Below, one piece after another: positions 1-29,061 of a stretch of 31,423 nucleotides of DNA. Every line of letters starts with the position of its first letter. Positions within the stretch are counted from its first letter, which is position 1. Under the pieces are notes generated by a model. That model did not search any database. It was not told the DNA's origin and was given only the letters and a program-made list of their open reading frames with translations. Origin of the DNA: Vitrella brassicaformis CCMP3155 (taxonomy: Eukaryota > Protista > Chromerida); contig CDMY01000682.1 in assembly GCA_001179505.1 (NCBI GenBank), positions 1-31,423 of the forward strand. The letters are read 5' to 3'. Both the position numbers and the translations under genes were made by a program.

Positions 1-1475
1 CCGTCGGATGGGGCTCATCCGGCCTTCAACTCGCCTCCCTCTCCCTCTTCCACTCGGTGCATGAGGCCACTCGGGGGTCGGTTATGTGCGACGACCTGGA
101 CGGCTTCCTCTCGGCCTTCAAGGAGAGGCATCTGGTGCCGCTGGAGAAGACCACCCTCGGGCAGCCCAACGCATCGTCGACAGAGCAGTTCTACTGTGTC
201 AAGCCGTCGAGTGAGCGATTTGCCTTAGAGGGGTGTGGGGAGTGCCGCGGGCCGCCGAGCGTCGCGTTGCTGTTCCTTGCGAAAGACAAGGTGCCGTTCG
301 GTCAGCTGTGGGCGGACTGGCTTGGCCTGGCCAGCGACAGGCGCAAGTTCACTGTCTATCTGCACCGGCACGACAACGCCACTGCGGCCCTTCATCCGCT
401 GTTCAATGCCTCGCTCATCGAGCCGGTCGGCACGAGCTACGGCAGCTTCATCCTGGCGGAGAACGCCCTGTGGCGGGCCGCCCTTCGCGACCCGTGCAAC
501 CAGATGATGGTGCTCCTGAGTATCACTCACGTCCCCGTGTCACACCCGGATGTCGTCTACGACGTGCTCTTCGAGACGAGAAGCGATGACATGGGCGGCC
601 TGCCGACCAGTAGAATATGGTAAGGCAGGCAGCCGCATACAGTGATGGGGATGAGGGAGGTAGCCGAATGATTTTCGCGTGTTCTGTTCAGTTATCACGA
701 ATATCGATTCATGAGGGCGGGGCCGGACCGGAGGGAAGCGGGTGTGGTCGCGTCCACGGCAGCAGCCCCTTCGTGTCAAGACGCGCTGAGTGACTCTGCA
801 ATCGGTAGGATTGTCCGTGTTGGGTGAGTACACTAGAAGAGACAAGGAAATGGATCCTCCTGTGTGGTCACAGATCGTAAGCACATGCAGTGGCGGACGT
901 ACAACCGTTACCACGCCGTCCTTACTGCCGCTCAAGGCCTCAACTTCCCTTACGACGGTGTGCACAACTGGAACAAAGCCATCAATTCCGCCCCCGATGA
1001 GTGGTTCCCGCACCACGTGTTGAGGCGCACGCTGGGCAACAAGGCTGTCTGGAAGCAGGTAATGAGAGGGGTGCCCGTCTGGCGACACACACATGGTGCG
1101 TGTGTAATGCTGTCATTCTCGCAGGTCAACGGTGGTCTGGGTGACTGGAGCCAGCAGAGGGAGCCCCACATCGAAGAGCTCTTCTGTGACACTCACATGT
1201 GCTGGAGCTGGCAGAAGACGAAAGACGCCTGCGGTCTAGGGGTCGCGACACAGTGCAGCCGCCTCGGGCCCCTGTGTTACACTCAGCTCAAGCTTGGCAA
1301 GCTGAAGGAGCTGATCAGGAGCCGCCATCCGCTGTTCTTCCGGAAGGTGCTGCCCAATGCCACCGTGATCATCGACTTCAACAAGAGAGAGGTGGGGCTA
1401 GTGGGTGAGCTACTGCTGCCTCTGATAAAGAATGTGAGTGGGACAGATCTAGCCGGCCGCCAGATAGGTGGCTAG
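1..1475 (+). CDS. Core-2/I-branching (Branch, DUF266/GT14-like) glycosyltransferase, 5'-partial, multi-exon (approx. <1-619, 691-~804, 874-1058, 1124-1475)
   Basis: Translation has VALLFLAKDKVPFGQLWADWL..FTVYLH..ENALWRAALRDPCNQMMVLLS..HVPV, then KHMQW and DEWFP, matching the motif order of plant DUF266/BC10-type GT14-like proteins. The frame is open back to the window start. GT-AG introns with compatible phases join the exons. Confidence 0.8.
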
Positions 1476-2414: not shown

Positions 2415-4760
2415 AAGCAGTGGTATTAATTTGTATTCGTTGGCGCGACAGTGAGCGGAGAGACACATGACGGCATACACACTGACAAGATGCTCTTGAA
2501 TGACTCTTTGCATAAACAAATGAACGATAGGCTGCTTGCTTTGCTGCTTCTTTTCCCACGGCTTCACGTCATTCATCGCCCTCCACAGAATATAGGAGCA
2601 AGGGCCATGCTTCCGTGCCTCCGCAGGCTGATCGATTGGAAACGCTACATAGAAACTTCTGCTCACTTCATTTCTTTTGCCCGAGCATTTGGACTGCATT
2701 GGTGTCTCCGTCCTTCACACATTTGCACACGAAAAGACACAGACAGGAAAACACATCGGCCTCACGGCACAAAGGTACGAACACGTATGGTCTATCCGAC
2801 ACACAAAGTACATCAGACACAAGACTGGGCACCCAACAGACAGACAGAGATCTGTGTGTGCACGCAGGCGTGACAAGACGTGCACTCACACATCAGCCAG
2901 CTGGCTATAGCTGTGGCCTCGGAACCCCTAAAGCACCAAACGAACACACTACACGACGCCTTCGCCTTTCAGCACACATGGATGGATGGTACGGATAAAG
3001 GTCTTTCCCCTGCCGGCCTGTTTTGAGCCGGGCAGGAGCAAGAGAGGCAGCAGGGTAGCATCGACAAGGAGACACACAACCACACACACACACACACACA
3101 CACACAGACAGAGAGAGAGAGAGAGACACATACACACGAACCCCGCTTTACACATGAAGGCAAGCAGTGGTATGGCCAGCGGAAAAACCACATGGGTGCA
3201 TGTCCGGCCTGCGAGTGTTGGGAGGCAAATCCCGTCAAGTCACAGGCATGCAGGCTGTGCACAGCGGCTGCTCTCGTACGAACACTCTGGGCCCCACTTC
3301 AAAAACTGCACCCAGGACACACTCACACTCACACACATACACATACACATCGATGAACACATACACAACAAAATGCCACGAGAGGTCAAAAGTGCGCGAA
3401 GGACATGGTGCGGAAACAAAGGAAAAGGAAAACAGAGTGGCAAAAGGTGGACAATGCGAACCACAGAAATTGATTCACTGACAAGGAAGTCACGTATTAA
3501 AAGAGACCATGCCGAGATACCTCAGTATTGGTCAAGAAAGTTGTTGTTCTGCCCACGAGGCACGGGAATCGTGACTGCAGACACACCCAACGAAGCCACA
3601 GGAAGTAAGAGACATTCTCCTTTCTCCCTCTCAGGTCTGCTGCGCAGCTTACAGTGCACTTCGATGTCCTTGCCCTCGATCTCTCTATTGAACGGCGTCG
3701 CTGCGAGTGTGTACATGCCCGGCGAGCCGATGGCCTCACTGGCGGCTTTGGTGAAGGGTGCTTGCAGAGCCATCGTTTCCGAGCCAGCGGGCGGCTCGCT
3801 GTTGCCGAAGGCCGTAAATGCTTGATCCTTGGCGCCCTGGGTGGCCCTCTCGAGATAGGGAGGATCTCGTATGCTGAGCAGCAAGGACATCAAATTGTGC
3901 GTGTGAGGACGTGTGCGTGTGTGTGGGTGCCTTACGTGTCCCAATCCATGAAGTTTCCCTTACACACCACACACAACAGAGCCAGAGCAAACACGTATCA
4001 TCAAGTACGATTCATAAGTGTCTCTGCCCACTTGGTAGTCAAAGAGGAGGAACTGGACGGCTGTGACGCAGGCCGACTCGGGGACGGCCGTGAAGGTGAA
4101 GTCCATACCCATCTCAGCGGGCACCACAAAGTCAGTCGTGCCGTCTTCTATCACCTTGGCGCTGCCCTCGGACTGCCCTCTCTTGACGTCCACCAGCTGG
4201 AAGCCGGCAAGGGACGGAGTGACATCTGCAGACAGAGAGCGGCCACACGGAGAGAGAGATGCACGAGACAAGTAGGTGCATGGAGCTGCGAACACTGACC
4301 TGTGCAATTCTGAGCTGTGTTTGCAATCAGGAGCGACACACACAACGCACAACGTGAATGGCGGCCATCGATCTCATTTGCCCTGTGCTTCCCCGTTACC
4401 TTCGCCTGTTGACGCATCCTCCCCTTCCTGCTTCAGTGTCAGGACGATGCTCTCAAGAACGTCCCCTGGCACGCCGTCTGAAGGGGGAAGACGTTCGAAG
4501 ACGTGGGAAGTGTATGTACAGCGAGGGGCCCTCGGTTACCTTTTTCTGTGCCTGTGTCAGTGTCAGTATCTCTGTCAGTGTCTGTGACTGTGACTGTGAC
4601 TGTGTCAGAATCTCTGTCAGTGTCTCTGCCTTTGTCAATGATAACAGTCACTAAGTCTTTTACGCCGTCCACTAAGTCGTCTAGGTCCTTCGGTTCCTTT
4701 GTCGGGTCCTGCTCTTCCCATTCGTCTGCTGCGACGGCAAGCCCGAGCAGGGCGAGCGAC
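2415..4760. repeat. Inverted segmental duplication arm; partner ~29110-31423
   Basis: The window end (31423) reverse-complements to aagcagtggtattaatttgtattcg at 2415. Similarity continues through the non-coding flank and the unknown secreted protein gene. Confidence 0.9.
3081..3127. repeat. (CA)n(GA)n compound microsatellite
   Basis: cacacacacacacacacacacacacagacagagagagagagagagac. Similar tracts occur at ~15705-15722, ~15933-15971, ~20568-20606 and ~30700-30730. Confidence 0.9.
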
Positions 4761-4795
4761 AGCAGGGTGGCAAGAGAAAAGACCCGAAGATGCAT
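3522..4795 (-). CDS. Unknown secreted protein, copy A1: signal peptide, Asp/Thr low-complexity linker, ~130-aa beta-sandwich-like domain; multi-exon with 15-nt and 23-nt micro-exons
   Basis: MHLRVFSLATLLSLALLGLAVAA|DEWEEQDP is a signal peptide. Spliced product continues ...DGVPGDVLESIVLTLKQEGEDASTGE-AQNCT-DVTPSLAGFQLVD...AVQFLLFDYQ-GNFMDWDT-IRDPPYLE...GMYTLAATPFN...EVH-FTIPVPRGQNNNFLDQY*. Splice sites are largely conserved across the three paralogues. Confidence 0.75.
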
Positions 4796-4896: not shown

Positions 4897-7800
4897 ATGG
4901 CGGCCTCGCTGGTTGCCGTTCTCCTGTGGTCGTCTCTCACGACGGCCTCAGCAGATGAGCACGAGAGAAGCTTCCTTTCTTCTTCGGCCGCAGAGGGCAT
5001 GGCCGCGGCGGTGGATCAGGCGCCGTCCTCCTTTCCATCATCTCCGTTTGTCGTGGAGGGGGCTGTGCGTCCATGGGGCGATGGGCTGTTCGAGTACATG
5101 CATCCCCGGCCAGGGGCGCTGCACGTGTCGGAGCTGACGTCAATTGCAGTCCGGTGATGCACAGCAAAGATGAGACACTCGTTTCAGTGTGCGTGTATGT
5201 CCCGTTTGTCGGTGTATTTCCCGTCAGGGAGGGCGATTTGGTCATCCCCACTGATCTCGACGCACTCTTTGATGTGAAGGGCCGGCAGAGCGGCAAGGTG
5301 GATGGCCGCGTCGTCCTTGCACGCGACAACAAGACGGTGCTCTTCTATCCTGACAAGCCATTTGTCCCTGGCGACAGCGTCACAGTCCAGCTGCGGCCCG
5401 GCCTCCGAGTGCGGCGCTCTGACAACGGCAGAGAGGAGGAGGCGGGCGGACACGAATGGCAATTTCACATCAGAGGCNNNNNNNNNNNNNNNNNNNNNNN
5501 NNNNNNNNNNNNNNNNNNNNNNNNNNNNNNNNNNNNNNNNNNNNNNNNNNNNNNNNNNNNNNNNNNNNNNNNNNNNNNNNNNNNNNNNNNNNNNNNNNNN
5601 NNNNNNNNNNNNNNNNNNNNNNNNNNNNNNNNNNNNNNNNNNNNNNNNNNNNNNNNNNNNNNNNNNNNNNNNNNNNNNNNNNNNNNNNNNNNNNNNNNNN
5701 NNNNNNNNNNNNNNNNNNNNNNNNNNNNNNNNNNNNNNNNNNNNNNNNNNNNNNNNNNNNNNNNNNNNNNNNNNNNNACGGGGGACGAGGAGCTCTATTT
5801 CTTCGGCGTTGGACGGTATTTTGCAGACGAAATCGGCCAGAGCGTCATCACCACTCGAGAGGTACGTCATGTGTCCATCTGCACTGATAGGTGACGCCGA
5901 TGTATCTTGCTGTATGCACATGTAGGGTGACTTGGTCTGGTGGACTCAAGAGGTGGGGAAGGGGGGCGGCATGCTCGGGGTAACGCCAAGGGGCCATCTA
6001 GTCCACTGGGACAAACAGCCTAACGACACGGCCGAGACTGCATACGAGCTGAATTCGACTTATCAGGTGGTCGACAGGCACCAGACCGGTATGCAGACGA
6101 TGTCCTGCGCGGGACGGGGCCAGACGAATGTGTCTGCAGGTCATGGATATCAGCTGGACCGTCACACCATCTCCTTCGACGGCGACAGCGCCATCTTGGT
6201 GGCCTACACTAAGACCAACGGCACAGTTCACAACGGTTTGCAAGCACAGAGCTGCTTGTCTCATCTTTTGACACATCTCTTCTTCTGCTGTGCAGTGGTG
6301 CACGTTCTCGACGCTGACAAGTGGGCAAACGGGAGGACGATTGTCTCATTCATGTACGGACCGCTACGTGTTGCAGGAATGTCCTACTGGAGTGGAGGAC
6401 CATTGATGACTTCATTGGAGCGGCCGACCCTACTCTCGCGGAAGCAACAAAGGATCCAGAAGATGTAAAGGAGAGGCTTGTTTCAGACGTATCGATCGCT
6501 CACTCAACAATTGTGTCTCCGTCTGTCGCTCTGTGCGTTGTGCGCCAGGCCTATCACACCAACAGCGCCGAGCGGACGCCGGACGGTGAGCCGCGCTCGA
6601 CAGGGCACACATCTGGAGATGATGGCTTTTTGCTGCAGGGAACGTAATCGTCTCCATGCGCAACTGTAATCTCGTCCTGTTGCTGAGCGGCAAGACGGGC
6701 CAGATCCTGTGGCGCATGGGAGGCCACACGAAGTACGTCAGTGCAGCTACTTGTGTCCTTGTGCAGCGCCTGTTTGCGTGTGCCATGCAGTGACTTTACT
6801 TTCATCGGCGAAGACATGGATCCCCCATTCGTTGGCCAACATGATGTTCAGCAACTAGCGGACGGCAACATCCTCATGTCAGAAAGATGGCAAAGATAGA
6901 CACAAGAGCCAGTCACCTGTGGACGATGCCCATATGCGGCATGGCATGTAGGTATGACAATGGCCTTCAGAGGGGCATTGGCGGGACACGGCCTTCTAGG
7001 GCTCTCGAGCTGAGTCTTGACCTGAACAAGATGACTGCCACGAAAGTCTGGTCCTTTACGCATCCGAACAAGTGAGGAATCCACTCGCAGGATAGGTCAT
7101 GAGTCTCGTCGTTCTTCGTGTCTGTGCAGAATGAAAAGCTTCTGCTGCGGAGGGGTCCAGAAGGTCGACAACGGAGAGTAAGATAGTAGGCGCGCTCAGT
7201 CATGGAGTGATGCACATTCTGTCTTTGTGTCAGGGGCAACCCACCGACCATGCTAATAAGCTGGGGCTACACTGGTCCATTCTTCACTGAGGTGACTTAC
7301 GAGGAGAATCCGACCATAATTCGCGAGTTCGAGGGTCTCGACGGCCACCGAGGCCTTCTCCAGAGCTGGGAGGGCTTTTCGACGGAGCGGCCGCGGCTGC
7401 TCCTCTGCAGCGACGCCAACACGCAGGCGAGTGGCGGCCAGCCGTCGATCGCCCGGCTGCAGGACTGGACCATGCACTTCTCATTCAATGGCGTCACAGG
7501 TAGGCACGCAGAGACACTACACGCAGGCAGTAATCGATGGCCTTCTGTGTAGGGATCAGCAAGTGGAGGCTGTACATCGGCGCTGACAGTGATGTGCCGC
7601 TCAGCCGGCACCTGATGGAGCGCAGCAAGACCGCCTTCGAGGAGATCATCACACTGCAGGAGCTGGTCGACACCATGGCGGCCCGGAACGTGACTCTGAC
7701 GACAGACAGCAACGCCAACACGACCGACGTGGCCTTGTATGTGCGGGTGGTGCCGGTCAAGGGCGATAGTGAGCTGCTCAGGCCATCCAAGGCACTCAAG

Positions 7801-8224
7801 GGTATGGCGGCCACACGAAATGTAATACAGACCATTGTGGGTGTGTCTGTGTGTGTGTCTGTTGCCTGCAATCAGTGCCGCTGGTTGTGTCGTCTCGCGA
7901 CGAGGAGAGTGGTGCTGTGAGTGTGTCCCCTCCCCGCTCTGCAGTGCCCTGCCGCTGCTACCAGCCCGACATCGGCCTGAGGGAGCACCTGGGCAGACCA
8001 AAGCCGGAGCGGGAGAGCCCCGTTGTGGACATGGTGGCCGTCAGTGAGTGCGCCAGGGCATGTGCCGACAGCGACAAGTGCGAGACATTCTTTTTCTTCG
8101 AAGACACCGGCGAGTGTCAAATGGACGAGAAGAAGCATGAGGGACGCTACGGCAGGACGGATCTCCACTCGCTCGGAGGGGTCGTCTCTGGCCGGAGGAA
8201 CTGCATGTACGAGAGGCTGGCGTG
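4897..8224 (+). CDS. Secreted aryl-sulfate sulfotransferase (ASST / Arylsulfotran_2-like), copy 1, with N-terminal Ig-like (Big_5-type) and C-terminal PAN/apple domain; multi-exon, spans an N gap
   Basis: Signal peptide MAASLVAVLLWSSLTTASA. Ig-like segment FEYMHPRPGALHVSELTSIAVR..VLFYPDKPFVPGDSVTVQL. ASST motifs in order: DRH, YHTNS, NVIVSMRNCN, ILWRMGG, GQHDVQQL, YDNG, SRALELSL, ISWG, FSFNGVT..W...KTAFEE. C-terminal ECARACADSDKCETFFFFEDTGEC...VSGRRNC is an apple-type Cys pattern. Confidence 0.85.
5478..5777. other. Assembly gap (300 N)
   Basis: N run. The paralogous interval 12504-12695 implies only ~192 bp are missing. Confidence 0.98.
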
Positions 8225-9713
8225 AAAAATGCCGACCTTGAAGATGGAACGAGAGGCCTGTCTATTTCCTGTGCTCTTGCGCTCCATGTGTTCGTATCTG
8301 CTGCTGCTGTTGCTGCCTCATCTTCGCCCTTTTCGCTGGTTGCATGGACGATTAGATGGGAGAGGGGGAGACACCTGAGGCCGAGTATGTGTGTACACTG
8401 CTGCTGTGCGTATCGATTTGTCCATGTTCGACTGCACATTTAGACAGACGAATCGATGGGTTGCTCACTCGGGCATTCATTGTGTAGTACGTGCCCTCTG
8501 TAGGATCGATGGCTGTTTTTAATCTGTATTTGTAGAGCCGTTTTCATTCGATTTGTATTTGTTCGTTCATGCTGTCTCCTCACATATATGTACACAACTC
8601 ATGTACGTGCACACTTATTCGTTTGCAACTGTCTGTCCGTGGGGAATTGTGTCCTGTCAGTTCGGCACCCAATCTGACGCTGACGGAACACATTCGGTTT
8701 TTCTTCCAAGGGGGGCCGGGCAGGGTAGAAAGACATGCTGTTTGATAAAAAACACTGTCCCGATATCTTGGAACCATGAATGATATAAACTCTTCGAGCT
8801 CCCCCCCCCTGCCACGAACCAGCCACACAACCGACGTTCTCCGCCTTAGCAGAGAGGGTGAATTTTTTCGCCGCTTTGCTGATCTTGAGAGGTCTCAAAG
8901 TCACCGTCTGATTTGTGGACTGCTAATACGAAAAAATGTGAATCACTCCCGTCGTCAGCCCATGGCGGGAATCCATTGACTCATAGCGCAACGGCAGGCA
9001 GAGTCTGTCGGTCTCTCATGAAATGACTGCGTCAACAGTCAAGGAATCAATGATAGATCTGTCCAGTGATGAATCACTGCATCACTGCAGGCGCCTGCTT
9101 CGTATGTGCTGAGTGAGAGACGCCAGTGATCCTGGCCTGGATGGCCACGACGACGGCAGGTCACATGGGTGTCTCACATCAGAATGCAGTTCAAAACAGT
9201 CCATGTGGCGCTGGATGCTTTCATGCTTTCTCGACCTGCCGCCCTCTTTTTTCTGGTGCCTCGTCCACGATTCTGCCCTTGACCCGCTCCATTTAATTTG
9301 TGTGCTCGTGCAAGCGTCACACAAGTACACTATCCGTCCTTCCACTTTCCCCACATAAAGCCAAGACGAGGAACACACAAACATCTCTGACATCTCTCAG
9401 CTGACACATTCCCCGCGCCCATAAAGGACCGACAAGCGGATACAGGGGGAGGCACACATGGCACACATCCACATCGGCACAAGAAGAGCCAAAAACCACG
9501 CGAGGACAAAATTAGCACTTGGTTTTCTCGCAGGGCATTGCATGCGCCCAAGAATTCCTCGCTGTCCCTTCCCCGTCAATGTGCATCCGGTACGCAGACA
9601 CTAATCAAACACCACCGTACGTGACGAACAAAAGGGAGCTCACGCACGAAGCCACCAGGCAGACATCGTCCGCCAAAACCAATGTCACACTGCAAACAGG
9701 ACTCAAAGACCCA

Positions 9714-10989
9714 TCAGCTTTTCTCTCCCTCTTTCTCTTCCACCGGCGAGCTCAGCAGCTTCCCAAAACGGTGCCGGTTGTCTAGGAAGATGGATTGCCT
9801 GGCGTCACACCAGCCATCGCCAACCCCCCTGAGCCGAAGTGCGTCCTTCTCCTTGTAGTCATGCCGCAGCAGGATGCATGAAGACCAGCACTTGGCAGGC
9901 CACAAACCCGGACGCTCGCAGCTGACCAACTTGTCGCGGTCCTCCTCGTGGTAAGAGCCCCTGAACGCTCCATTCTTGAACGCGGCCTTGTCGACGCCGA
10001 AATTGGCCTGGCCACTGTCGCTCACGGCCAAAGGCACTGCTGCCGGCAGCTCGTCTTGCACCAGCTGCGCAACGAGGTCGTGCTGCTGCACGATGAGATT
10101 GTTCTCGAGAATCAAGAGATGTGACGCGTTGACCTGGCGCATGAGACGCGACGCCTCCTTGTGGGCTGCATTGCCGCTTGTCGCCTCTACGTGCTCATGG
10201 GCTGCTGCAAATCTCTGCTTGAAGCTCTCATCAAGCTGCAGATCGCAGGACGGGCCGCTCGATACGAAAATGTCCGTCTTGCTGTAGTCCACCTCCATTG
10301 CCATGAGCCCCTCAACGAACTCACTGTTGTTGCCGGTCGGGTGCGCACAGATCACCGCCAGGACCATCCTTGGCTGTTCATATGGTGACGCGCTCCTCTC
10401 GTACCATACTGACCCTTCTTCAAAGCTCCACGCCCCAGCCTGATATGGCGGACCCAAAACACAACGAAATAGACACACAGACAGACAGGCAGACAGACAG
10501 ACAGAAATGGTGTCGTCATGTTGACGGATGTCGCTGACCTCAAGTAGCCTCATTTGGTGGTACAAGGGCCTGCCACCGCCGTTTCCGTGGAGCACTGCCG
10601 CGGCGTCCTTGCCATCAGTACGGGCAAAGGTCAGCCCATTCACCATTCCCTCTCCATCTCGCGAGCGGTAAGTGGCGGGCGCGAGCATCCACTCCTCGGG
10701 GTTGACTCTTGTGAGAGTCTGGAAGAGCAGACGCTCATAATCCAGCTTAACTGTCACCCCATGACCAACGTCCTGCTCCAGGAATCGGTTGGTAAAGAAC
10801 AACTGATCGTCCTCCCGAGGTGGATACTTATCCAGGCACAAAGCGAGAGCACCAGCACGACCAGCATAGCCGCCGGAGTTGAGATATCGGTACGCATTCT
10901 CTACATGAGATGGCGGCATGGGATACTTGTGCTTGAGGTGCCACTTGGGCCATATTCCGAGCTCGCTGTGGCAGCAAATAGAGACATAC

Positions 10990-11024
<35 letters not shown>

Positions 11025-11804
11025 GAGTACAAAGCGCTCTGGCTGGCCCGTTTTCGTGCAATCTTTTGGTTAACTGAAGTGGCCCACACACCTGGAAACG
11101 ACAATGGTCGTGTTGTCATTGTCGGGTATAAGCAGACGCATGCGCCGCTCCAGCTCTTCGTTGGGGATCCGCACCAGCGTATCATACCTGCAAGAGATAT
11201 CAAGTAATCAGCCTCTTTCTTGACGAGCTTTTCCACACCCACCCATCAGTGAAGATAACCAGCAAGTCTGGGTCCTGTCTCCAAAGCCATCGCCTCATGA
11301 TCTCGAGTTTGGCTTCTTTCCCGCCCTTTGTCTGATCCTGTCCGAGGGTCAGAAAGTGTACGCCGTAATAACTTGCTGAGAAACCACACACACAGAGGGT
11401 CAGATTGACGGACTGGCAGGGAGCAGGCGGGCAAATGCAGATAAGAGGCGTTCCGACCTGATCGTGACAATGCCCGATAGCCTGGGTGCTCTGGGTTCTG
11501 TCCTATAGTGACGAGAACAAAGGCTGGAAGAGAGCCGTTGACATGTGACACCACCAGCTACACCAAACATAAGCAGTCCAAATAAATGTGCATCGCATTC
11601 TGCGCAGCTCACTTGATCTACAGGCACTTCCCGCTGCTTTGGCGCTGGTCCGGCCCCTGACGTGCACACGATTCCCCTGAGGCTCGAGCTCAGCCATCCC
11701 CGCGAACTCACATACACGCCGACAAAGGAGGAAATGAGGAAGACGCCCAGGAACGCCGCGGCGAAAAGCAAGGCAAAACGAGAAGCAGTCGCCTGGGCCT
11801 GCAT
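9714..11804 (-). CDS. PLOD/LH3-type glycosyltransferase (GT + accessory domains, no lysyl-hydroxylase domain) with N-terminal signal anchor; multi-exon
   Basis: Spliced product: MQAQATASRFALLFAAAFLGVFLISSFVGVYV (TM) ... FVLVTIGQNPEHPGYRALSRS ... GGKEAKLEIMRRWL..LVIFTDG-YDTLV ... SSELGIWPKW ... RYLNSGGYAG ... DDQLFFT ... LDYERLLFQTL ... VLHGNG ... IFLDNRHRFGKLL. This follows the conserved motifs of the PLOD N-terminal GT and accessory domains. The stop comes ~12 codons after FGKLL. Confidence 0.85.
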
Positions 11805-12200
11805 ATCCGGGCACGAGTCAAATGTGTGAAAGAACTTACAGAGGCGGCACAGGGGAGCCAATCGATGGCAGTGAGAGAGTGGCAATGATGACCGTCATTG
11901 GCAACGTGCGGCTGCTCGGTGCCCGTACAGCTGTTGTAAATTCACTCATCGGATATCTTCTCCTTTACTGCTTAATCAAAGCCGGATCACAAGCCGGATC
12001 ACAAGCCGAGGTAGAGAGAAGGTTCCTAATTCCGTCCAATGCGTCGTTGGCGCCGGCCTCTCTTGATCGGAGGCGGTTCATCGTGGAGGGCGCTGTGCGT
12101 CCGTACGGGGGCAACTCGAGTACATGCATCCCCTCCCAGGGGCGCTGCACGTGTCGGAGCTGACGTCAATTGCAGTCCGGTGATGCGCAGCAAAGATGAG
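11528..12200. repeat. Inverted duplication of the PLOD-like 5' end, shared promoter and ASST 5' end; partner ~28330-29042
   Basis: ORFs 11400..11885(-) and 28684..29058(+) are identical up to TCQRLSS. 11822..12163(+) matches 28367..28747(-). Confidence 0.92.
11805..11884. promoter_or_regulatory. Putative bidirectional promoter (PLOD-like / ASST copy 2), ~80 bp
   Basis: Divergent ATGs at 11804 (-) and 11885 (+). The same sequence is duplicated at ~28685-28764. Confidence 0.4.
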
Positions 12201-13291
12201 ACACTCGTTTCAGTGTGCGTGTATGTCCCGTTTGTCTGTGTATGTCCCGTCAGGGAGGGCGATTTGGTCATCCCTACTCAGCTCGACACACTCTTTGATG
12301 TGGAGGGCCGGCAGAGCGGCAAGGTGGATGGCCGCGTTATCCTTGCACGCGACAACAAGACGGTGCTCTTTTATCCTCACAAGCCATTCGTCCCTGGCGA
12401 CAACGTCACAGTCCAGCTGCGGCCCGGCCTCCGAGTGCGGCGCTCTGACAACGGCAGAGAGGAGGAGGCGGGCGGACACGAATGGCAATTTCACATCAGA
12501 GGCAAAACCGAGTCGATCGGCGAAAGGGATATTTGGCCGCACTCGTATTATAGGTTGCACGATGGAAAGCAGGAGGCTGAGAAGCAGCCGGCGCCGATGG
12601 ACCGATACCGCACGCTGCCGACGTGGTCAGCCAAGTGGAGGCCATCAGCCGAGGGGGAGAAGGCGGCCTTGGAGAGGAGGAAGGAAGACATTGACACGGG
12701 GGACGAGGAGCTCTATTTCTTCGGCGTTGGACGGTATTTTGCAGACGAAATCGGCCAGAGCGTCATCACCACTCGAGAGGTACGTCATGTGTCCATCTGC
12801 ACTGATAGGTGACGCCGATGTATCTTGCTGTATGCACATGTAGGGTGACTTGGTCTGGTGGACTCAAGAGGTGGGGAAGGGGGGCGGCATGCTCGGGGTA
12901 ACGCCAAGGGGCCATCTAGTCCACTGGGACAAACAGCCTAACGACACGGCCGAGACTGCATACGAGCTGAATTCGACTTATCAGGTGGTCGACAGGCACC
13001 AGACCGGTATGCAGACGATGTCCTGCGCGGGACGGGGCCAGACGAATGTGTCTGCAGGTCATGGATATCAGCTGGACCGTCACACCATCTCCTTCGACGG
13101 CGACAGCGCCATCTTGGTGGCCTACACTAAGACCAACGGCACAGTTCACAACGGTTTGCAAGCACAGAGCTGCTTGTCTCATCTTTTGACACATCTCTTC
13201 TTCTGCTGTGCAGTGGTGCACGTTCTCGACGCTGACAAGTGGGCAAACGGGAGGACGATTGTCTCATTCATGTACGGACCGCTACGTGTTG
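11885..13291 (+). pseudogene. ASST copy 2, 5' part; frameshifted, truncated at N gap
   Basis: tacgggggcaactcgag versus tacggcggcgggcagctcgag in copy 4 is a 4-nt loss that shifts the frame in exon 1. The signal-peptide Met of copy 4 (MPSSC) is absent. 12696-13291 appears identical to 5778-6373. Confidence 0.7.
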
Positions 13292-13591
13292 NNNNNNNNN
13301 NNNNNNNNNNNNNNNNNNNNNNNNNNNNNNNNNNNNNNNNNNNNNNNNNNNNNNNNNNNNNNNNNNNNNNNNNNNNNNNNNNNNNNNNNNNNNNNNNNNN
13401 NNNNNNNNNNNNNNNNNNNNNNNNNNNNNNNNNNNNNNNNNNNNNNNNNNNNNNNNNNNNNNNNNNNNNNNNNNNNNNNNNNNNNNNNNNNNNNNNNNNN
13501 NNNNNNNNNNNNNNNNNNNNNNNNNNNNNNNNNNNNNNNNNNNNNNNNNNNNNNNNNNNNNNNNNNNNNNNNNNNNNNNNNNNNNNNNNNN
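13292..13591. other. Assembly gap (300 N)
   Basis: N run. Sequence after the gap restarts within the Ig-like exon. Confidence 0.98.
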
Positions 13592-14620
13592 CTGGCGACA
13601 ACGTCACAGTCCAGCTGCGGCCCGGCCTCCGAGTGCGGCGCTCTGACAACGGCAGAGAGGAGGAGGCGGGCGGACACGAATGGCAATTTCACATCAGAGG
13701 CAAAACCGAGTCGATCGGCGAAAGGGATATTTGGCCGCACTCGTATTATCGGTTGCACGATGGAAAGCAGGAGGCTGAGAAGCAGCCGGCGCCGATGGAC
13801 CGATACCGCACGCTGCCGACGTGGTCAGCCAAGTGGAGGCCGTCAGCCGAGGGGGAAAAGGCGGCCTTGGAGGGGAGGAAGGAAGACATTGGCACGGGGG
13901 ACGAGGAGCTCTATTTCTTCGGCGTTGGGCGGTATTTTGCAGACGAAATCGGCCAGAGCGTCATCACCACTCGAGAGGGACGTCATGTGTCCATCTGCGC
14001 TGATAGGTGACGCCGATGTATCCTACTGGAGCGCAGCACGACCGCCTTCGAGGAGATCGTCACACTGCAGGAGCTGGTCGACACCATGGCGGCCCGGAAC
14101 GTGACTCTGACGACAGACAGCAACGCCAACGCGACCGACGTGGCCTTGTATGTGCGGGTGGTGCAGGTCAAGGGCGACAGTGAGCTGCTCAGGCCATCCA
14201 AGGCACTCAAGGGTATGACGGCCACACGAAATGTAACACAGACCATGCTGGGTGTGTCGCTGTCTTTGTCTGTAATCAGTGCCGCTGGTTGTGTCGTCTC
14301 GCGACGAGGAGAGTGGTGCTGTGAGTTTGTCCCCTCCCCTCTCTGCAGTGGCCTGCCGCTGCTACCAGCCCGACATCGGCCTGAGGGAGCACCTGGGCAG
14401 ACCAAAGCCGGAGCGGGAGAGCCCCGTCGTCGACATGGCGGCCGTCAGTGAGTGCGCCAGGGAATGTGCCGACAGCGACAAGTGCGAGACATTCTTCTTC
14501 TTCGAAGACACCGGCGAGTGTGAAATGAACGAGAAGAACTATGAGAGCCATCGAGAGCTGCACTCGCTCGGAGGGGTCGTCTCTGGGCTGTCAGCGTGCG
14601 TACAAGAAGAACTGGCCTGA
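13592..14620 (+). pseudogene. ASST copy 3 with ~1.7-kb internal deletion of the catalytic domain; keeps Ig-like and PAN segments
   Basis: Junction gccgatgtatc-ctac-tggagcgcagca at ~14022-14026 joins copy-1 position 5906 to 7616. The splice donor GAG|GTACGT has become GAGGGACGT at ~13979. Confidence 0.8.
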
Positions 14621-16242: not shown

Positions 16243-17681
16243 TCACATTCTCCAGCCGGACCCTTCATTGCTGAGGAACTTCGCCTTCTCTGAAGCGGGA
16301 ATCGTGACTGCAGGCACACACATCCATACGAAGTCATCCACGTGGCTGTCCAAGTCTAGTTGCCTGTTGTCGACAGCTTACATTGCACTTCGATGTCCTT
16401 GCCCTCGATGTTTGCGTTGAAGGGGATGGCGGCGAGTGTGAATATTCCCGGCGAGCCGATGGCCTCATTGGCGGCTTTGGTGAAGGGTGCTTTCAGAGCC
16501 ATTGTCTCCCAGCCAGCGGGCGGCTCGCTGTTGCCGAAGGCCGTGAATGCTTGGTTCTTGGCGCCCTGGGTGGCCCTCTCGAGATAGGGAGGATCTCGTA
16601 TGCTGAGCAGCAAGGCCATCAAATTGTGCGTGTGAGGACGTGTGCGTGTGTGTGGGTGCCTTACGTGTCCCAATCCATGAAGTTTCCCTTACACACCACA
16701 CACAACAGAGCCAGAGCAAACACGTATCATCAAGTACGATTCATAAGTGTCTCTGCCCACTTGGTAGTCAAAGAGGAGGAACTGGACGGCTGTGACGCAG
16801 GCCGACTCGGGGACGGCCGTGAAGGTGAAGTNNNNNNNNNNNNNNNNNNNNNNNNNNNNNNNNNNNNNNNNNNNNNNNNNNNNNNNNNNNNNNNNNNNNN
16901 NNNNNNNNNNNNNNNNNNNNNNNNNNNNNNNNNNNNNNNNNNNNNNNNNNNNNNNNNNNNNNNNNNNNNNNNNNNNNNNNNNNNNNNNNNNNNNNNNNNN
17001 NNNNNNNNNNNNNNNNNNNNNNNNNNNNNNNNNNNNNNNNNNNNNNNNNNNNNNNNNNNNNNNNNNNNNNNNNNNNNNNNNNNNNNNNNNNNNNNNNNNN
17101 NNNNNNNNNNNNNNNNNNNNNNNNNNNNNNNTTCTATCACCTTGGCGCTGCCCTCGGACTGCCCTCTCTTGACGTCCACCAGCTGGAAGCCGGCAAGGGA
17201 CGGAGTGACATCTGCAGACAGAGCAACACAACGACGACGAGTACGCTAGCTCTGATGTGTGCCATGTCCTGCTTACCTGCGCAGTCTGCTTGGAAAAGGA
17301 ACCACCCGGACAGACACACCCACATGCACACCAAGGTTCCGTACAGACAGGGCCCATTTTCGTCGTCTTTCTGTCACTGGTGTTCGCACCTTCGGTCGTT
17401 GCACCTTCCTCGCTCAGCGTCGTGGCGACGTCTTCCACCACCGCCATGGGCACTGTGTGGCCTTTCAGCCCGATGAGTTTTTTGAGCACCTCGAGGATGG
17501 CCTCAAGAAGGCCGTGACCACCGATTTTCAGGCCGTCACCCTTGTCAGCGCCGTCACCCTTGTCAGCGCCGTCATCCTTCGGTTCCTTTGTCGGGTCCTG
17601 CTCTTCCCATTCGTCTGCTGCGACGGCAAGCCCGACCAGGGCGAAGAACAGAAAAGTGAGCGAGAGAAGTCGGCACTGCAT
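16243..17681 (-). CDS. Unknown secreted protein, copy A2 (spans N gap)
   Basis: MQCRLLSLTFLFFALVGLAVAA|DEWEEQDPTKEPKDDGADKGDGADKGDG. It has the same downstream exons, including the 23-nt micro-exon ggaaacttcatggattgggacac. The last exon after tgcag| reads FTIPASEKAKFLSNEGSGWRM*. Confidence 0.7.
16832..17131. other. Assembly gap (300 N)
   Basis: N run. The paralogous interval 4103-4145 implies only ~43 bp are missing. Confidence 0.98.
17534..17576. repeat. 18-bp coding tandem repeat (~2.4 units; DGADKG)
   Basis: gccgtcacccttgtcagc gccgtcacccttgtcagc gccgtca. Confidence 0.85.
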
Positions 17682-20606: not shown

Positions 20607-20808
20607 CGGACTAGCAAACTCTAAGCTGACACACACATGCGACACTGGAAATGGCTGGTTGAGCCCTTACATCACTCTGGGTGCTTTAACGCAGATGTCG
20701 ATGCTGTGTCGAGAAAGGCACAGGGCGAGAACAGTGGATGATCGCGAGCAACACTCGCATCTGAAGCAACCAAGACAGACAGATGATGCAGTGAGTTCAT
20801 GGGTAGGG

Positions 20809-25459: not shown

Positions 25460-28400
25460 TCAGGCCAGTTCTTCTTGTACGCACGCTGACAGCCCAGAGA
25501 CGACCCCGCCAAGCGAGTGCAGCTCTTGATGGCTCTCATGCTTCTTCTCGTCCATTTCACACTCGCCGGTGTCTTCGAAGAAGAAGAATGTCTTGCACTT
25601 GTCGCTGTCGGCACATGCCCCGGCGCACTCACGGATGGCCGCCATGTCCACAACGGGGCTCTCCCGCTCCGGCTTTGGTCTGCCCAGGTGCTCCCTCAGG
25701 CCGATGTCGGGCTGGTAGCAGCGGCAGGGCACTGCAGAGAGGGGAGGGGACACACTCACAGCACCACTCTCCTCGTCACGAGACGACACAACCAGCGGCA
25801 CTGATTGCACCCAACAGACACGCAGAGACACCCAGCATGGTCTGTGTTACATTTCATGTGGCCGTCATACCCTTGAGTGCCTTGGATGGCCTGAGCAGCT
25901 CACTGTCGCCCTTGACCGGCACCACCCGCACATACAAGGCCACGTCGGTCACGTTGGCGTCGCTTTTTGTCGTCAAAGTCATATTCCGGGCCGCCATGGT
26001 GTCGACCAGCTCCTGCAGTGTGACGATCTCCTCGAAGGCGGTCTTGCTGCGCTCCATCAGGTGCCGGCTGAGCGGCACATCACTGTCAGCGCCGATGTAC
26101 AGCCGCCACTTGCTGATCCCTACACAGAAGGCCATCGATCACTGCCTGCGTGTAGTGTCTCTGCGTGCCTACCTGTGACGCCATTGAATGAGAAGTGCAT
26201 GGTCCAGTCCTGCAGCCGGGCGATCGACGGCTGGCCGCCACTCGCCTGCGTGTTGGCGTCGCTGCAGAGGAGAAGCCGCGGCCGCTCCGTTGAGAAGCCC
26301 TCCCAGCTGTGCAGCAGTGGACGATGGCCTCGAAAGCCTTCGAACTCGCGAATTATCGTCGGGTTGTCGTCGTAAGTCACCTCAGTGAAGAATGGACCAG
26401 TGGAGCCCCAACCTATCAGCATGGTCGGGGGGTTGCCCCTGACACAAAGACAGAATGCGCATTCTACGCACTGACGACAGTGTCCAATCGCTTACTCTCC
26501 GTTGTCAACCTTCTGGACCCCTCCGCAGCACGTGCTGGTCTTTCTGCTCACACACGACGAGACGCGTCACCTATTCTGCCGCGGGTGGACTTCATACTTG
26601 TTCGGATGCGGAAAGGACCAGACTTTCGTGGCCGTCATCTTGTTCAGGTCAAGACTCAGCTCGAGTGCTCGCGAGGGTCTCCCTGCCCGCATGCCACTTC
26701 GACTCCCATTGTCATACCTACATGCCGCATATGGGCATCGTCCACAGAGGACTGGCTTTTCTGCCTATCTTTGCCATGTCGCTGACATGAGGATGTTGCC
26801 GTCCGCTAGTTGCTGTGCATGGTGTTGGCCAACGAATGGGGGATCCATGTCTTCGCCGATGAAAGTGAAGTCACTGCATGGCAGACGCAGACAGGCGCTG
26901 CACAACACAGGCGGCTTCATTGACGTACCTCGTGTGGCCCCCCATGCGCCACAGGATCTGGCCCGTCTTGCCGCTCAGTAGCACAAGTAAATTGGCATTG
27001 TGCACGGAGACGATCACATTGCCTGGAGCAGGATGCATTCGGGCAATGTGTTTGCCAGTGTCCAACGTTGCTTACCGTCAGGCGTCCGCTCGGCGTTGTT
27101 CGTGTGATACACCTGAGAAACATACACGTTGAGAGGAAAACACGTACCCAGCTTTCCAAAGCATTTGTACGTCCCCTCCATCCCATGGTGCATCCGGCAG
27201 CATCGGGTCGGCTCCGCCTCTGAAATCGTCGACGGTTCGCCATTCCATCAACACGTTCCTGACGGGCCGCACGGAGCCGACTGCTTTGTACACGGCCATA
27301 CGCAAAACGGGCGCCTACTTGTCTGCATCTTGAACCTGAACCACTGCGGCCACAAGGGAATGAGTGGTCAAAACACCCTTTTGCCTGTTCGACTTACCGG
27401 TGTGTATTGTGCGGTTGAGCGCGTTGATCCTGGTGTAAGCCGTCACTACTGAGTTGTCGTTATCAAAAGTAATTGAGTGACGGTCGACTTGATAGCCGTG
27501 ACCTGTTTAAACACATGATGTGCGTTCAGAAAAAAAGAGACGGACAGGCTGGTCCGTAATCAATTACACACGTACCCATTACATATCTGTCGACCACTTG
27601 ATATGTGGCGTTCAAAAGATAGACTGTGTCGGCAGTGTCGTTCAATAACTGGTCCCAGTGTGCCAGATGGCCATTCGGCGTGACGCCAAACATGCCGCCT
27701 CCTAATTTGCCTTCTGAGGTCCACCACACTAAGTCGCCCTAGATGAACACGATGAATGAAGACATGCGCTGGCCACCGTCTTTTGCATGACTGTACCTGA
27801 CGTGTAGCGATCAGGCTTTCGCCAGCTCGCCCGCGGACGCCAAAGAAATAGAGCTCCTCGTCCCCCGTGCCAATGTCTGCTTTCCTCCCCTCCAAGGCCG
27901 CCTTCTCCCCCTCGGCTGACGGCCTCCACTTGGCTGACCACGTCGGCAGCGTGCGGTAGCGGTCCATCGGCGACGGCTTCTTGTCGGCCTCCTGCTCACT
28001 CTCGTTCAGCTGTCTACCATACATGAGCGACCAAATCTCTTCTTCGCTGATCGACTCGGTCTTGCCTCTGATGTGAAATTGCCATTCGTGTCCGCCCGCC
28101 TCCTCCTCTCTGCCGTTGTCAGAGCGCCGCACTCGGAGGCCGGGCCGCAGCTGGACTGTGACGTTGTCGCCAGGGACGAATGGCTTGTCAGGATAGAAGA
28201 GCACCGTCTTGTTGTCGCGTGCAAGGACGACGCGGCCATCCACCTTGCCGCTCTGCCGGCCCTCCACATCAAAGAGTGTGTCGAGATCAGTGGGGATGAC
28301 CAAATCGCCCTCCCTGACGGGACATACACAGACACATCGGCGAGTGTCTCATCTTTGCTGCACATCTCACCTGACCGCAATTGACGTCAGCTCCGACACG

Positions 28401-28612
28401 TGCAGCGCCCCTGGCCGGGGATGCATATACTCGAGCTGCCCGCCGCCGTACGGACGCACAGCCCCCTCCACGATGAACCGCCTCCGATCAAGAGAGGCCG
28501 GCGCCAACGACGCATTGGACGGAATTAGGAACCTTCCCTCTCCCTCGGGTTGTGATCCGGCTGCACAAAAAAGAGCAGTAAGCAAGAGAAAAGACACACA
28601 AGAGGAAGGCAT
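25460..28612 (-). CDS. Secreted ASST copy 4 (Ig-like + ASST + PAN/apple), apparently complete; alternative start at 28684
   Basis: Signal peptide MPSSCVSFLLLTALFCAAG. Exon series parallels copy 1: DRH, YHTNN, NVIVSVHNAN, ILWRMGG, GQHHAQQL, LIGWG, FSFNGVT, KTAFEE, and the apple Cys pattern ending VQEELA*. Confidence 0.82.
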
Positions 28613-28764: not shown

Positions 28765-28956
28765 ATGCAGGCCCAGGCGACTGCTTCTCGTTTTGCCTTG
28801 CTTTTCGCCGCGGCGTTCCTGGGCGTCTTCCTCATTTCCTCCTTTGTCGGCGTGTATGTGAGTTCGCGGGGATGGCTGAGCTCGAGCCTCAGGGGAATCG
28901 TGTGCACGTCAGGGGCCGGACCAGCGCCAAAGCAGCGGGAAGTGCCTGTAGATCAG
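28765..28956 (+). other. Duplicated exon 1 (signal anchor) of the PLOD-like gene, followed by a truncated intron/exon 2
   Basis: MQAQATASRFALL...EVPVDQ|gtgagc is 192 nt and nearly identical to 11804-11613 (-). Similarity breaks at ~29042. Confidence 0.85.
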
Positions 28957-29061
28957 GTGAGCTGCGCAGAATGCGATGCACATTTATTTGGACTGCTTAT
29001 GTTTGGTGTAGCTGGTGGTGTCACATGTCAGCGGCTCTCTTCAACTTCCCTACCGTGACAG

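What the first reader, a model, noticed from the sequence alone, without database searches (positions are those of the whole stretch)
4897..8224. Secreted PAPS-independent-type sulfotransferase with an Ig-like + ASST + PAN/apple architecture
Seen in sequence: ASST motifs (DRH, HxNS, SxRN, QHD, FNGxT..W..FE) lie between an N-terminal Ig-like segment and a C-terminal apple-type Cys module, behind a signal peptide, in an intron-rich gene. Established knowledge: ASSTs are beta-propeller enzymes, best known in bacteria and fungi, that transfer sulfate from aryl sulfates without PAPS. PAN/apple domains often bind carbohydrate or protein and are expanded in alveolate adhesins. Inference: a bacterial-type enzyme gained a eukaryotic glycan-targeting module and may sulfate the cluster's polymer outside the usual PAPS-dependent Golgi route. 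I do not know this domain combination from characterised proteins.
Basis: partly seen in the sequence, partly recalled or inferred. Interest (0 to 1): 0.75.

Follow-up and report, generated by a model that had tools for sequence, protein, structure and literature searches.

The report
Algal secreted sulfotransferase with Apple domain
The alga Vitrella brassicaformis carries a real, intron-rich gene for a probably secreted, bacterial-type sulfate-transferring enzyme that needs no PAPS. It ends in an 'Apple' binding module, a pairing I found only in this alga, where it recurs in several sister genes, and its chemistry has never been tested.

Summary
The window is the whole contig CDMY01000682.1 of Vitrella brassicaformis CCMP3155, and the gene is annotated as CEM29820.1.

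**Domains.** The annotated product scores 72 and 62 bits on the two arylsulfotransferase (ASST) Pfam models. Its last exon scores above threshold on PAN_1. The N-terminal Ig-like domain is below Pfam threshold, but bacterial relatives share it.

**Active site.** All five E. coli ASST active-site residues that align are kept, including the sulfo-histidine.

**Closest structure.** It is Cpz4 of Streptomyces, which sulfates a sugar hydroxyl.

**Assembly gap.** It sits inside one exon. Sister copies in the same window show about 64-65 missing codons, in frame.

**Database model.** It is faulty: it drops the signal peptide, splices over the gap and skips 11 residues.

**Family.** The window holds three ASST-Apple copies among four glycosyltransferase genes. 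At least four more such loci lie elsewhere in the genome. I saw ASST with PAN only in Vitrella.

**Prior work.** This scan already reported the fusion on other DNA of this genome (s1-221646). No paper describes it.

**Not shown.** Expression of this copy, its activity, its donor and its acceptor are all unshown. Other family loci have no glycosyltransferase neighbours, so 'sulfates the cluster's polymer' remains a guess.

The parts
4897..5153 (+). Exon 1: start codon, hydrophobic signal-peptide-like N-terminus (about 4897-4953), start of the N-terminal beta-sandwich
   Evidence: Hydropathy. Residue 1 of the transcript-derived P0017 of copy C aligns at 4897. The donor is GT. The database model starts at the internal ATG 4999 and loses this part.
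5228..5477 (+). Exon 2, left part: Big_5-like Ig-like beta-sandwich, open at the gap
   Evidence: Big_5 is sub-threshold: E=0.12, 13.6 bits. It is 98.4% identical in DNA to copy C and 95.6% to copy B. The equivalent residues 40-145 of the paralogue model are all-beta with pLDDT about 90.
5478..5777 (.). Assembly gap (300 N) inside one exon; hides about 192-195 nt (64-65 codons) of the linker between the sandwich and the propeller
   Evidence: Copies B and C join the same flanks by 192 and 195 nt of open frame. Both gap edges are in phase 0.
5778..5861 (+). Exon 2, right part (my 'E3'): end of the linker, first propeller strand
   Evidence: tblastn of paralogues. It is 100% identical to copy B 12696-12779.
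5926..6088 (+). Exon 4, propeller
   Evidence: GT-AG. Paralogue alignment. The database model cuts its end short.
6140..6235 (+). Exon 5, with GHGY and DRH; His 6163-6165 corresponds to E. coli ASST His252
   Evidence: The transcript-derived paralogues P0011 and P0013 carry GHGY, which the database model P0001 skips.
6296..6320 (+). Exon 6 (25 nt)
   Evidence: Donor at 6321 as in the database model. Paralogues read ...DAD(K/G)|NVLLEW. My first choice of donor (6354) was rejected.
6377..6464 (+). Exon 7, propeller
6549..6585 (+). Exon 8, YHTNS: His 6555-6557 and Asn 6561-6563 correspond to E. coli ASST His356 and Asn358
6639..6732 (+). Exon 9, SMRN: Arg 6659-6661 corresponds to E. coli ASST Arg374
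   Evidence: Pfam PF14269, E=2e-4, on this exon alone.
6791..6877 (+). Exon 10, QHD: His 6840-6842 corresponds to the sulfo-histidine His436 of E. coli ASST
   Evidence: The profile alignment to 3ELQ puts Q435-H436 on the QH column. The H436N mutant 4P04 shows N at that place..
6952..7071 (+). Exon 11, propeller (YDNG, SRALE)
   Evidence: Pfam PF05935, E=3.7e-3, on this exon alone.
7130..7177 (+). Exon 12, with the clade-specific CCGG
7234..7499 (+). Exon 13: last propeller blade and start of the C-terminal sandwich (FNGVT)
   Evidence: An exhaustive phmmer search found 8 hits; the 7 real ones are Vitrella or near-identical transcript/JGI sequences, the eighth is a spurious repeat protein.
7553..7801 (+). 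Exon 14: Cpz4-type C-terminal beta-sandwich (W, FE motifs)
   Evidence: Aligned to Cpz4 417-467. The structural match of the paralogue model covers 178-661.
7876..8225 (+). Exon 15: Ser/Pro linker, PAN/Apple module (Cys 7950 to Cys 8204), stop TGA 8223-8225
   Evidence: PAN_1 29.5 bits against a cut-off of 21.4. The six-Cys apple spacing is read directly. The model of this exon matches only PAN/apple folds. The acceptor at 7875 is supported by paralogue transcripts.
12050..14620 (+). Copy B of the same gene family: broken by a gap (13292-13591), the middle of the propeller is not assembled
25460..28612 (-). Copy C (P0012, CEM accession on the same contig): complete sister gene, Arg of SxR replaced by His, QHD reads QHH

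Best explanation
The gene encodes a protein of about 800 residues that enters the secretory pathway.

**Domain order**
- signal peptide
- Big_5-like beta-sandwich
- a linker of about 65-80 residues, part of it hidden in the assembly gap
- six-bladed ASST beta-propeller
- Cpz4-type C-terminal beta-sandwich
- short Ser/Pro linker
- one PAN/Apple domain

**Proposed mechanism**
- It most likely works as a PAPS-independent sulfotransferase by the ping-pong route known from E. coli ASST.
- A phenolic (aryl) sulfate gives its sulfuryl group to the His of the QHD motif. The two other His, the Asn and the Arg hold the group.
- The group then passes to a hydroxyl of an acceptor.
- The Apple domain most likely holds the enzyme on, or selects, a glycan or glycoprotein of the cell surface or wall.
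- A sugar hydroxyl is therefore the most likely acceptor, as for its nearest solved relative Cpz4.

**Shown here**
- the domains
- the intact active-site residues
- purifying selection against the sister copy
- the restriction of the fusion to Vitrella among what I searched
- the presence of the fusion on single mRNAs of sister genes

**Inferred**
- secretion
- activity
- the donor and the acceptor
- the role of the Apple domain
- expression of this copy
For: **ASST family and fold**
- Pfam ASST hits are above threshold and collinear on single exons.
- Sequence match to Cpz4 (9KF4/9KF6): E=3e-25 for the product, 6.5e-112 for the family profile.
- The paralogue model (65% identical) matches Cpz4 at Z 38.9, rmsd 2.6 A over 420 residues, and E. 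coli ASST at Z 30.

**Active site**
- The columns of His252, His356, Asn358, Arg374 and His436 are all kept in this copy.

**PAN/Apple**
- PAN_1 is above threshold on the last exon.
- The fold matches are only PAN/apple proteins. The best are the galactose-binding lectin SML-2 and TgMIC4.

**Acceptor**
- Cpz4 prefers a sugar hydroxyl as acceptor (review PMC13426309).
- ASSTs are independently fused to carbohydrate-binding modules in bacteria: CBM_4_9 in P0042, P0022 and P0044.
- In Vitrella they are also fused to trefoil or bulb-lectin modules.

**Constraint and expression**
- dN/dS against copy C is 0.29.
- The sister genes P0013, P0011, P0002 and P0014 carry ASST and PAN on one transcript.
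- N-terminal hydrophobic leaders occur in all full-length family members.
Against:
- The 5' part is tied to the rest only across a scaffold gap. The 596 nt right of the gap are identical to copy B.
- No aryl sulfate donor or donor-making enzyme was identified in the window.
- The PAN model is only moderately confident: pLDDT 71, best Foldseek E=7e-4, TM 0.45.
- No signal-peptide predictor was available.
- Nothing was assayed.
Confidence: 0.6

Rival explanations
1. It is an active secreted ASST, but its acceptors are small phenolic molecules (secondary metabolites, signals, xenobiotics), as for most bacterial ASSTs. The Apple domain only anchors the enzyme to the wall or matrix.
For: Most characterised ASSTs move sulfate between phenols (PMC13426309). 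The other family loci sit next to unrelated genes, not glycosyltransferases. The active site is the same as in the phenol-using E. coli enzyme.
Against: The nearest relative by far is Cpz4, which prefers a sugar hydroxyl. The repeated fusion of this enzyme to lectin-like or carbohydrate-binding modules points to glycans.
Confidence: 0.22
2. It is a binding protein or pseudo-enzyme. The propeller and the Apple domain serve as an extracellular adhesion or recognition module without catalysis.
For: The sister copy C has lost the Arg of SxR and reads QHH. The family is expanding and diverging.
Against: This copy keeps all five aligned active-site residues. It is under purifying selection.
Confidence: 0.1
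3. The locus as assembled is not one expressed gene. It is either a scaffold chimera of near-identical copies, or a silent recent duplicate.
For: There are gaps in copies A and B. A 596-nt stretch is 100% identical between them and is bounded by both gaps. Copy B is visibly scrambled. No transcript-derived protein matches this copy, whereas copy C and other paralogues have such transcripts.
Against: 5778-8225 is one uninterrupted stretch that holds the whole propeller, the C-terminal sandwich and PAN. Its frames are open and every splice site is intact. The flanks of the gap fit the paralogues' single exon exactly. dN/dS is 0.29.
Confidence: 0.08

Closest known systems
Cpz4, the ASST-type sulfotransferase of caprazamycin biosynthesis (Streptomyces sp.; PDB 9KF4, 9KF6)
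   Same: It has the same propeller plus C-terminal beta-sandwich: Z 38.9, rmsd 2.6 A, 420 residues for the paralogue model; family profile E=6.5e-112. It shares the DYxHxNS, SxR, QHD and NGxT..W..FE motifs. It is PAPS-independent and prefers a sugar hydroxyl as acceptor.
   Different: Cpz4 is a bacterial enzyme of 472 residues with no N-terminal Big_5-like domain and no PAN. It belongs to an antibiotic gene cluster with a dedicated donor-making pair of enzymes. No such genes were seen in this window.
E. coli CFT073 aryl sulfotransferase AssT (PDB 3ELQ, 3ETS, 4P04)
   Same: It has a six-bladed propeller (Z 30, 331 residues). The aligned active-site residues His252, His356, Asn358, Arg374 and His436 are shared. 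It has an N-terminal beta-sandwich before the propeller and is exported from the cytoplasm.
   Different: Only about 18% identical. It has long active-site loops and no Cpz4-type C-terminal domain or PAN. Thr501 corresponds to a Cys of the clade-specific CCGG here.
Apicomplexan PAN/Apple lectins (Sarcocystis SML-2, Toxoplasma MIC4 apple domains)
   Same: They are the best fold matches of the last exon's model and the only PAN hit in the PDB sequence search (4A5V). The six-Cys apple spacing is shared. They come from the sister lineage of chromerids.
   Different: Those are adhesins made of Apple repeats alone. Here a single Apple ends an enzyme. The matches are modest (E=7e-4, TM 0.45) and no binding residues were compared.
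Bacterial ASSTs fused to carbohydrate-binding modules (for example the Planctomycetota MAG protein P0042: Big_5, ASST, fn3, CBM_4_9, dockerin)
   Same: The same ASST subfamily, preceded by Big_5 and followed by a sugar-binding module. The logic is the same: an enzyme plus a glycan-targeting part.
   Different: The binding module is of another kind (CBM_4_9, not PAN). They are prokaryotic and also uncharacterised.
Sister genes in Vitrella (copy C P0012; P0013; P0011/P0016; P0015+P0009; P0089; P0003; and the ASST-trefoil genes of notes s1-226951 and s1-233300)
   Same: The same architecture and intron pattern, 36-84% identity, forming one clade with full support.
   Different: This copy keeps the full active site, whereas copy C does not. 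This copy lies in a window with two sisters and four glycosyltransferase genes.

Membership tests
ASST (PAPS-independent aryl sulfotransferase; Pfam PF05935 / PF14269) | Match to the family HMMs above the curated cut-off | tested here: met
   P0001 scores PF14269 72.4 bits (cut-off 27) and PF05935 61.7 bits (cut-off 24.2). Exons 9 and 11 alone give collinear hits.
ASST (PAPS-independent aryl sulfotransferase; Pfam PF05935 / PF14269) | Six-bladed beta-propeller like the solved ASSTs | tested here: met
   Tested on the model of paralogue P0013 (65% identical), not of this copy: Cpz4 Z 38.9, E. coli ASST Z 30.4. This copy aligns over the whole propeller.
ASST (PAPS-independent aryl sulfotransferase; Pfam PF05935 / PF14269) | Catalytic His (E. 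coli His436) and the sulfuryl-holding His252, His356, Asn358 and Arg374 | tested here: met
   The profile alignment to 3ELQ and 4P04 fixes the columns. This copy has H, H, N, R and H at 6163, 6555, 6561, 6659 and 6840.
ASST (PAPS-independent aryl sulfotransferase; Pfam PF05935 / PF14269) | Sulfuryl transfer from an aryl sulfate without PAPS | not testable with these tools
   Needs an enzyme assay.
PAN/Apple domain | Match to PAN_1 above the curated cut-off | tested here: met
   Last exon 29.5 bits against 21.4. Whole product 24.8 bits. The atlas neighbours are PAN clusters.
PAN/Apple domain | Apple cysteine pattern C1 ... C2-x3-C3-x5-C4-x11-C5 ... C6 | tested here: met
   Read directly in the translation of 7878-8222. 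C2, C3 and C4 are invariant in nine family members. One extra Cys lies next to C1.
PAN/Apple domain | PAN fold (a helix packed on a curved sheet) | tested here: met
   The model of this exon (pLDDT 71) matches SML-2, TgMIC4, factor XI and prekallikrein apple domains and no other fold at the top. Scores are modest: E=7e-4, TM 0.45.
PAN/Apple domain | Binds carbohydrate or protein | not testable with these tools
   Needs binding assays.
Big_5 / bacterial Ig-like domain (N-terminal) | Match to PF13205 above the curated cut-off | tested here: not met
   Exon 2 of this copy scores 13.6 bits against 23.6. Paralogues score 15-19 bits. Only the Planctomycetota relative P0042 passes, at 25.2 bits.
Big_5 / bacterial Ig-like domain (N-terminal) | Beta-sandwich fold | tested here: inconclusive
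   Residues 40-145 of the paralogue model are eight strands with pLDDT about 90. The domain was not modelled and searched alone.
Secreted protein | Cleavable N-terminal signal peptide | tested here: inconclusive
   There is a hydrophobic stretch at residues 1-12 followed by ...TASA. Homologous leaders occur in all full-length family members. No predictor and no experiment were available.
Functional gene cluster for a sulfated glycan | Glycosyltransferase genes next to the sulfotransferase | tested here: met
   Branch/GT14 3-1475, GT_PLOD 9714-11804, GT43 17930-19230 and GT47 20672-22972.
Functional gene cluster for a sulfated glycan | The same neighbourhood at other loci of the family | tested here: not met
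   Four other family loci have no glycosyltransferase neighbour.
Functional gene cluster for a sulfated glycan | Co-expression and a shared product | not testable with these tools

The most novel reading that the evidence does not exclude
Vitrella sulfates an extracellular or cell-wall glycan without PAPS at the transfer step. The glycan would be built by the neighbouring GT14, GT43, GT47 and PLOD-type glycosyltransferases. Apple-tethered ASST enzymes would pass sulfate to it from a secreted aryl sulfate carrier. That would be a eukaryotic polysaccharide-sulfation route of a kind so far known only from a bacterial antibiotic pathway.
Probability: 0.12. Interest if true: 0.85.

Novelty: new variant of a known kind. 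Interest (0 to 1): 0.5.

Why it matters
- All known polysaccharide and glycoprotein sulfation in eukaryotes uses PAPS-dependent Golgi enzymes.
- ASSTs have been studied almost only in bacteria, and their natural substrates are mostly unknown.
- Here is a family of probably secreted ASSTs in a eukaryotic alga. Each is fused to a lectin-like module, and one locus lies among glycosyltransferase genes. That gives a concrete, testable case for glycan-directed, PAPS-independent sulfation outside bacteria.
- It also gives biocatalysis a new scaffold with a built-in targeting domain.
- The Apple domain is the adhesion module of the alga's parasitic relatives (Toxoplasma, Sarcocystis). What it binds here could show what such modules did before parasitism.

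Tried and rejected
- **Joined model.** I searched exon by exon by reference and used the database's own product P0001.
- **Single exon against the PDB.** A search with exon 11 alone found nothing.
- **Splice sites.** I first chose a donor for exon 6 at 6354 and an acceptor for the last exon at 7945. Transcript-derived paralogues support the annotated sites 6321 and 7875, so I dropped mine.
- **Annotated model.** Its splice over the gap, its late start and its skipping of 11 residues before LDRH are rejected on the same evidence.
- **Search for a copy-A transcript.** The C-terminal 199 residues found only paralogues. Two exact-pattern scans of metagenome contigs found nothing, including a pattern shared with the expressed copy C. 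That collection therefore seems not to hold Vitrella transcripts, and the blank says nothing.
- **Origin by gene transfer.** The tree does not place the Vitrella clade inside any bacterial group, so I make no claim.
The genome paper has no 'sulfotransferase' or 'sulfat' in its text. The supplements held list only PAN-APPLE genes, with no ASST.
- **Copy-A structure.** I did not model the propeller of copy A itself, because its sequence is incomplete at the gap.
Full report
**What the window is.** The exhaustive protein search with exon 13 returned a 664-residue protein, P0001, 100% identical to the query. P0001 is CEM29820.1 / A0A0G4GJ27, 'Apple domain-containing protein' of Vitrella brassicaformis CCMP3155. 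It lies on a contig of 31,423 bases, the length of the window. The contig is CDMY01000682.1 of assembly GCA_001179505.1. Vitrella is a chromerid alga, the free-living sister of apicomplexan parasites.

**Gene model.** Reading the three frames gives 15 exon pieces on the + strand, from ATG 4897 to TGA 8223-8225.
- Every junction outside the gap is GT-AG, and introns are 51-84 nt.
- 507 nt (169 codons) lie left of the gap and 1707 nt (569 codons, stop included) lie right of it. Both sides are in phase 0 at the gap edges.
Searches were made exon by exon by reference, or with the database's own product.

**Faults in the database model, judged against transcript-derived sister proteins.**
- It starts at the internal ATG 4999 and so loses the hydrophobic leader.
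- It splices over the assembly gap.
- It skips 11 residues that include the conserved GHGY.
- It is right, and my first reading was wrong, about the exon 6 donor (6321) and the acceptor of the last exon (7875).

**The gap, tested first.**
- The stretch left of the gap ends in ...EWQFHIRG and the stretch right of it starts TGDEELYFF.
- In the two sister copies in this window these flanks are joined, within one exon, by 192 nt (copy B) and 195 nt (copy C) of open frame. Both read KTESI...DIG/D.
- So the gap hides about 64-65 codons of the linker between the first domain and the propeller, and the frame is kept. The full protein would have about 800 residues, like the sisters P0011 (799) and P0013 (760).
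- One caution: 5778-6373 is 100% identical to 12696-13291 of copy B, and that match ends exactly at copy B's own gap. The 5' part of the gene is therefore linked to the rest only by scaffolding.
- 5778-8225 is uninterrupted. It holds the whole propeller, the C-terminal sandwich and the Apple exon.

**Domains.**
- Single exons give collinear sub-threshold ASST hits.
- The annotated product gives PF14269 72.4 bits and PF05935 61.7 bits.
- The last exon alone passes PAN_1 (29.5 bits against 21.4). It shows the six-cysteine apple spacing.
- An AlphaFold model of that exon (pLDDT 71) matches only PAN/apple folds. The best are the Sarcocystis lectin SML-2, Toxoplasma MIC4 apple domains and factor XI, at modest scores.
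- The N-terminal segment is only Big_5-like: 13.6 bits here and 15-19 bits in sisters. It passes only in a Planctomycetota relative. It aligns with the N-terminal domain of bacterial relatives and is an all-beta domain of high confidence in the sister's model.
- The model of sister P0013 matches Cpz4 (PDB 9KF6) at Z 38.9, rmsd 2.6 A over 420 residues, spanning the propeller and the C-terminal sandwich. It matches E. coli ASST at Z 30 over the propeller.
- Compared with Cpz4, the extra parts are thus the N-terminal sandwich and the Apple domain. Compared with the nearest bacterial relatives, the only extra part is the Apple domain.

**Active site.**
- A family profile aligned to E. coli ASST (3ELQ, mature numbering) puts His252, His356, Asn358, Arg374 and His436 on conserved columns. 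The H436N mutant 4P04 confirms the last one.
- The review PMC13426309 names these residues and the sulfo-histidine mechanism.
- This copy has all five, at 6163, 6555, 6561, 6659 and 6840.
- Copy C has His in place of the Arg and reads QHH.
- dN/dS between this copy and copy C is 0.29, so the genes are under constraint.

**Family and distribution.**
- The window holds three copies: A (the finding), B (12050-14620, broken and scrambled around a gap) and C (25460-28612 on the minus strand, P0012).
- Further ASST-PAN loci lie on contigs 435 (two), 574 and 931. One locus without a PAN lies on contig 655.
- Transcript-derived sisters (P0013, P0011, P0002, P0014) carry ASST and PAN on one message.
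- Among the 29 and 60 relatives found by the word and profile searches, only Vitrella proteins pair ASST with PAN.
- The exhaustive search with exon 13 found no real relative outside this family, and the nearest large Atlas clusters are bacterial ASSTs without PAN.
- These surveys are samples, not a census.
- In a tree of 50 sequences the Vitrella genes form one fully supported clade on a long stem. It is sister (support 94) to fungal plus actinobacterial-type ASSTs, so a bacterial donor is not shown.
- Some bacterial ASSTs are fused to CBM_4_9. Earlier notes of this scan report Vitrella ASSTs with trefoil tails. Fusion of this enzyme to sugar-binding parts is therefore recurrent.

**Neighbourhood.**
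- The contig also carries genes with Branch/GT14, GT_PLOD, GT43 and GT47 domains.
- The four other family loci I inspected have no glycosyltransferase neighbour, and eukaryotic neighbours need not work together.
- I therefore treat the link as a lead only.

**What it most likely does.**
- I commit to an active, secreted, PAPS-independent sulfotransferase. It takes sulfate from an aryl sulfate onto the His of QHD and passes it to a hydroxyl.
- The Apple domain would tether it to, or select, a glycan or glycoprotein.
- A sugar acceptor is favoured because Cpz4 prefers one and because of the repeated fusions to sugar-binding parts.
- The donor is unknown.
- Rivals are phenolic acceptors, a non-catalytic binder, and an unexpressed or mis-scaffolded copy.

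**Prior knowledge.**
- No paper in the library links Vitrella with ASST.
- The 2015 genome paper does not mention sulfotransferases. In the supplements held it lists only PAN-APPLE genes.
- The scan itself already reported an ASST-Apple gene on other DNA of this genome (s1-221646).

**Limits.**
- No transcript of this copy was found.
- Expression and splicing of this particular copy are therefore not shown.

Noticed in passing
window 12050-14620: Copy B of the ASST-Apple gene is scrambled. It is intact up to 13291, then comes a 300-N gap. After the gap, 13592-14028 repeats the second half of exon 2 up to the next intron. At 14027 the sequence jumps into mid exon 14 and the Apple exon. The middle of the propeller is missing, so this is either a misassembly or a truncated copy.
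   Followed up: partly
window 5778-6373 and 12696-13291: These 596 nt are 100% identical between copies A and B, and the match is bounded by the assembly gaps of both copies. Either gene conversion was very recent or one sequence was placed twice by the assembler.
   Followed up: partly
window 13702-13893: This 192-nt open stretch is flanked by sequence 99% and 96% identical to the two edges of copy A's gap. It may be the unread piece of copy A placed at the wrong spot. I did not put it into the gap.
   Followed up: no
window 25460-28612 (minus strand): Copy C (P0012) has His in place of the active-site Arg and reads QHH instead of QHD. Its database model lacks the signal peptide, which the MMETSP transcript P0017 shows. 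The transcripts P0014 and P0017 end in retained introns.
   Followed up: partly
window 3522-4795 (-), 16243-17681 (-), 28765-30235 (+): A gene without a Pfam match, with a signal-peptide-like start and an acidic Asp/Thr-rich stretch, occurs three times at 85-100% DNA identity. Twice it sits head-to-head with an ASST-Apple gene, so the pair seems to have been duplicated as a unit.
   Followed up: no
window 3-1475, 9714-11804, 17930-19230, 20672-22972: There are four glycosyltransferase-type genes in 31 kb: Branch/GT14, PLOD-type GT, GT43 and exostosin/GT47. These are families used for glycosaminoglycan-like chains in animals.
   Followed up: partly
window 7130-7177 (exon 12): All Vitrella family members have two adjacent cysteines (CCGG) where E. 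coli ASST has the active-site Thr501 and Cpz4 has Gln. I cannot explain this.
   Followed up: no
L003 6239-9346: On contig CDMY01000435.1 the annotated genes for P0015 (N-terminus plus half an ASST) and P0009 (the other half plus Apple) lie 23 nt apart on one strand. They are probably one gene split by the annotation.
   Followed up: no
L006 2111-5093: An LTR-retroelement-like pair of reading frames (reverse transcriptase, RNase H, integrase, chromodomain) lies near the family member P0003.
   Followed up: no
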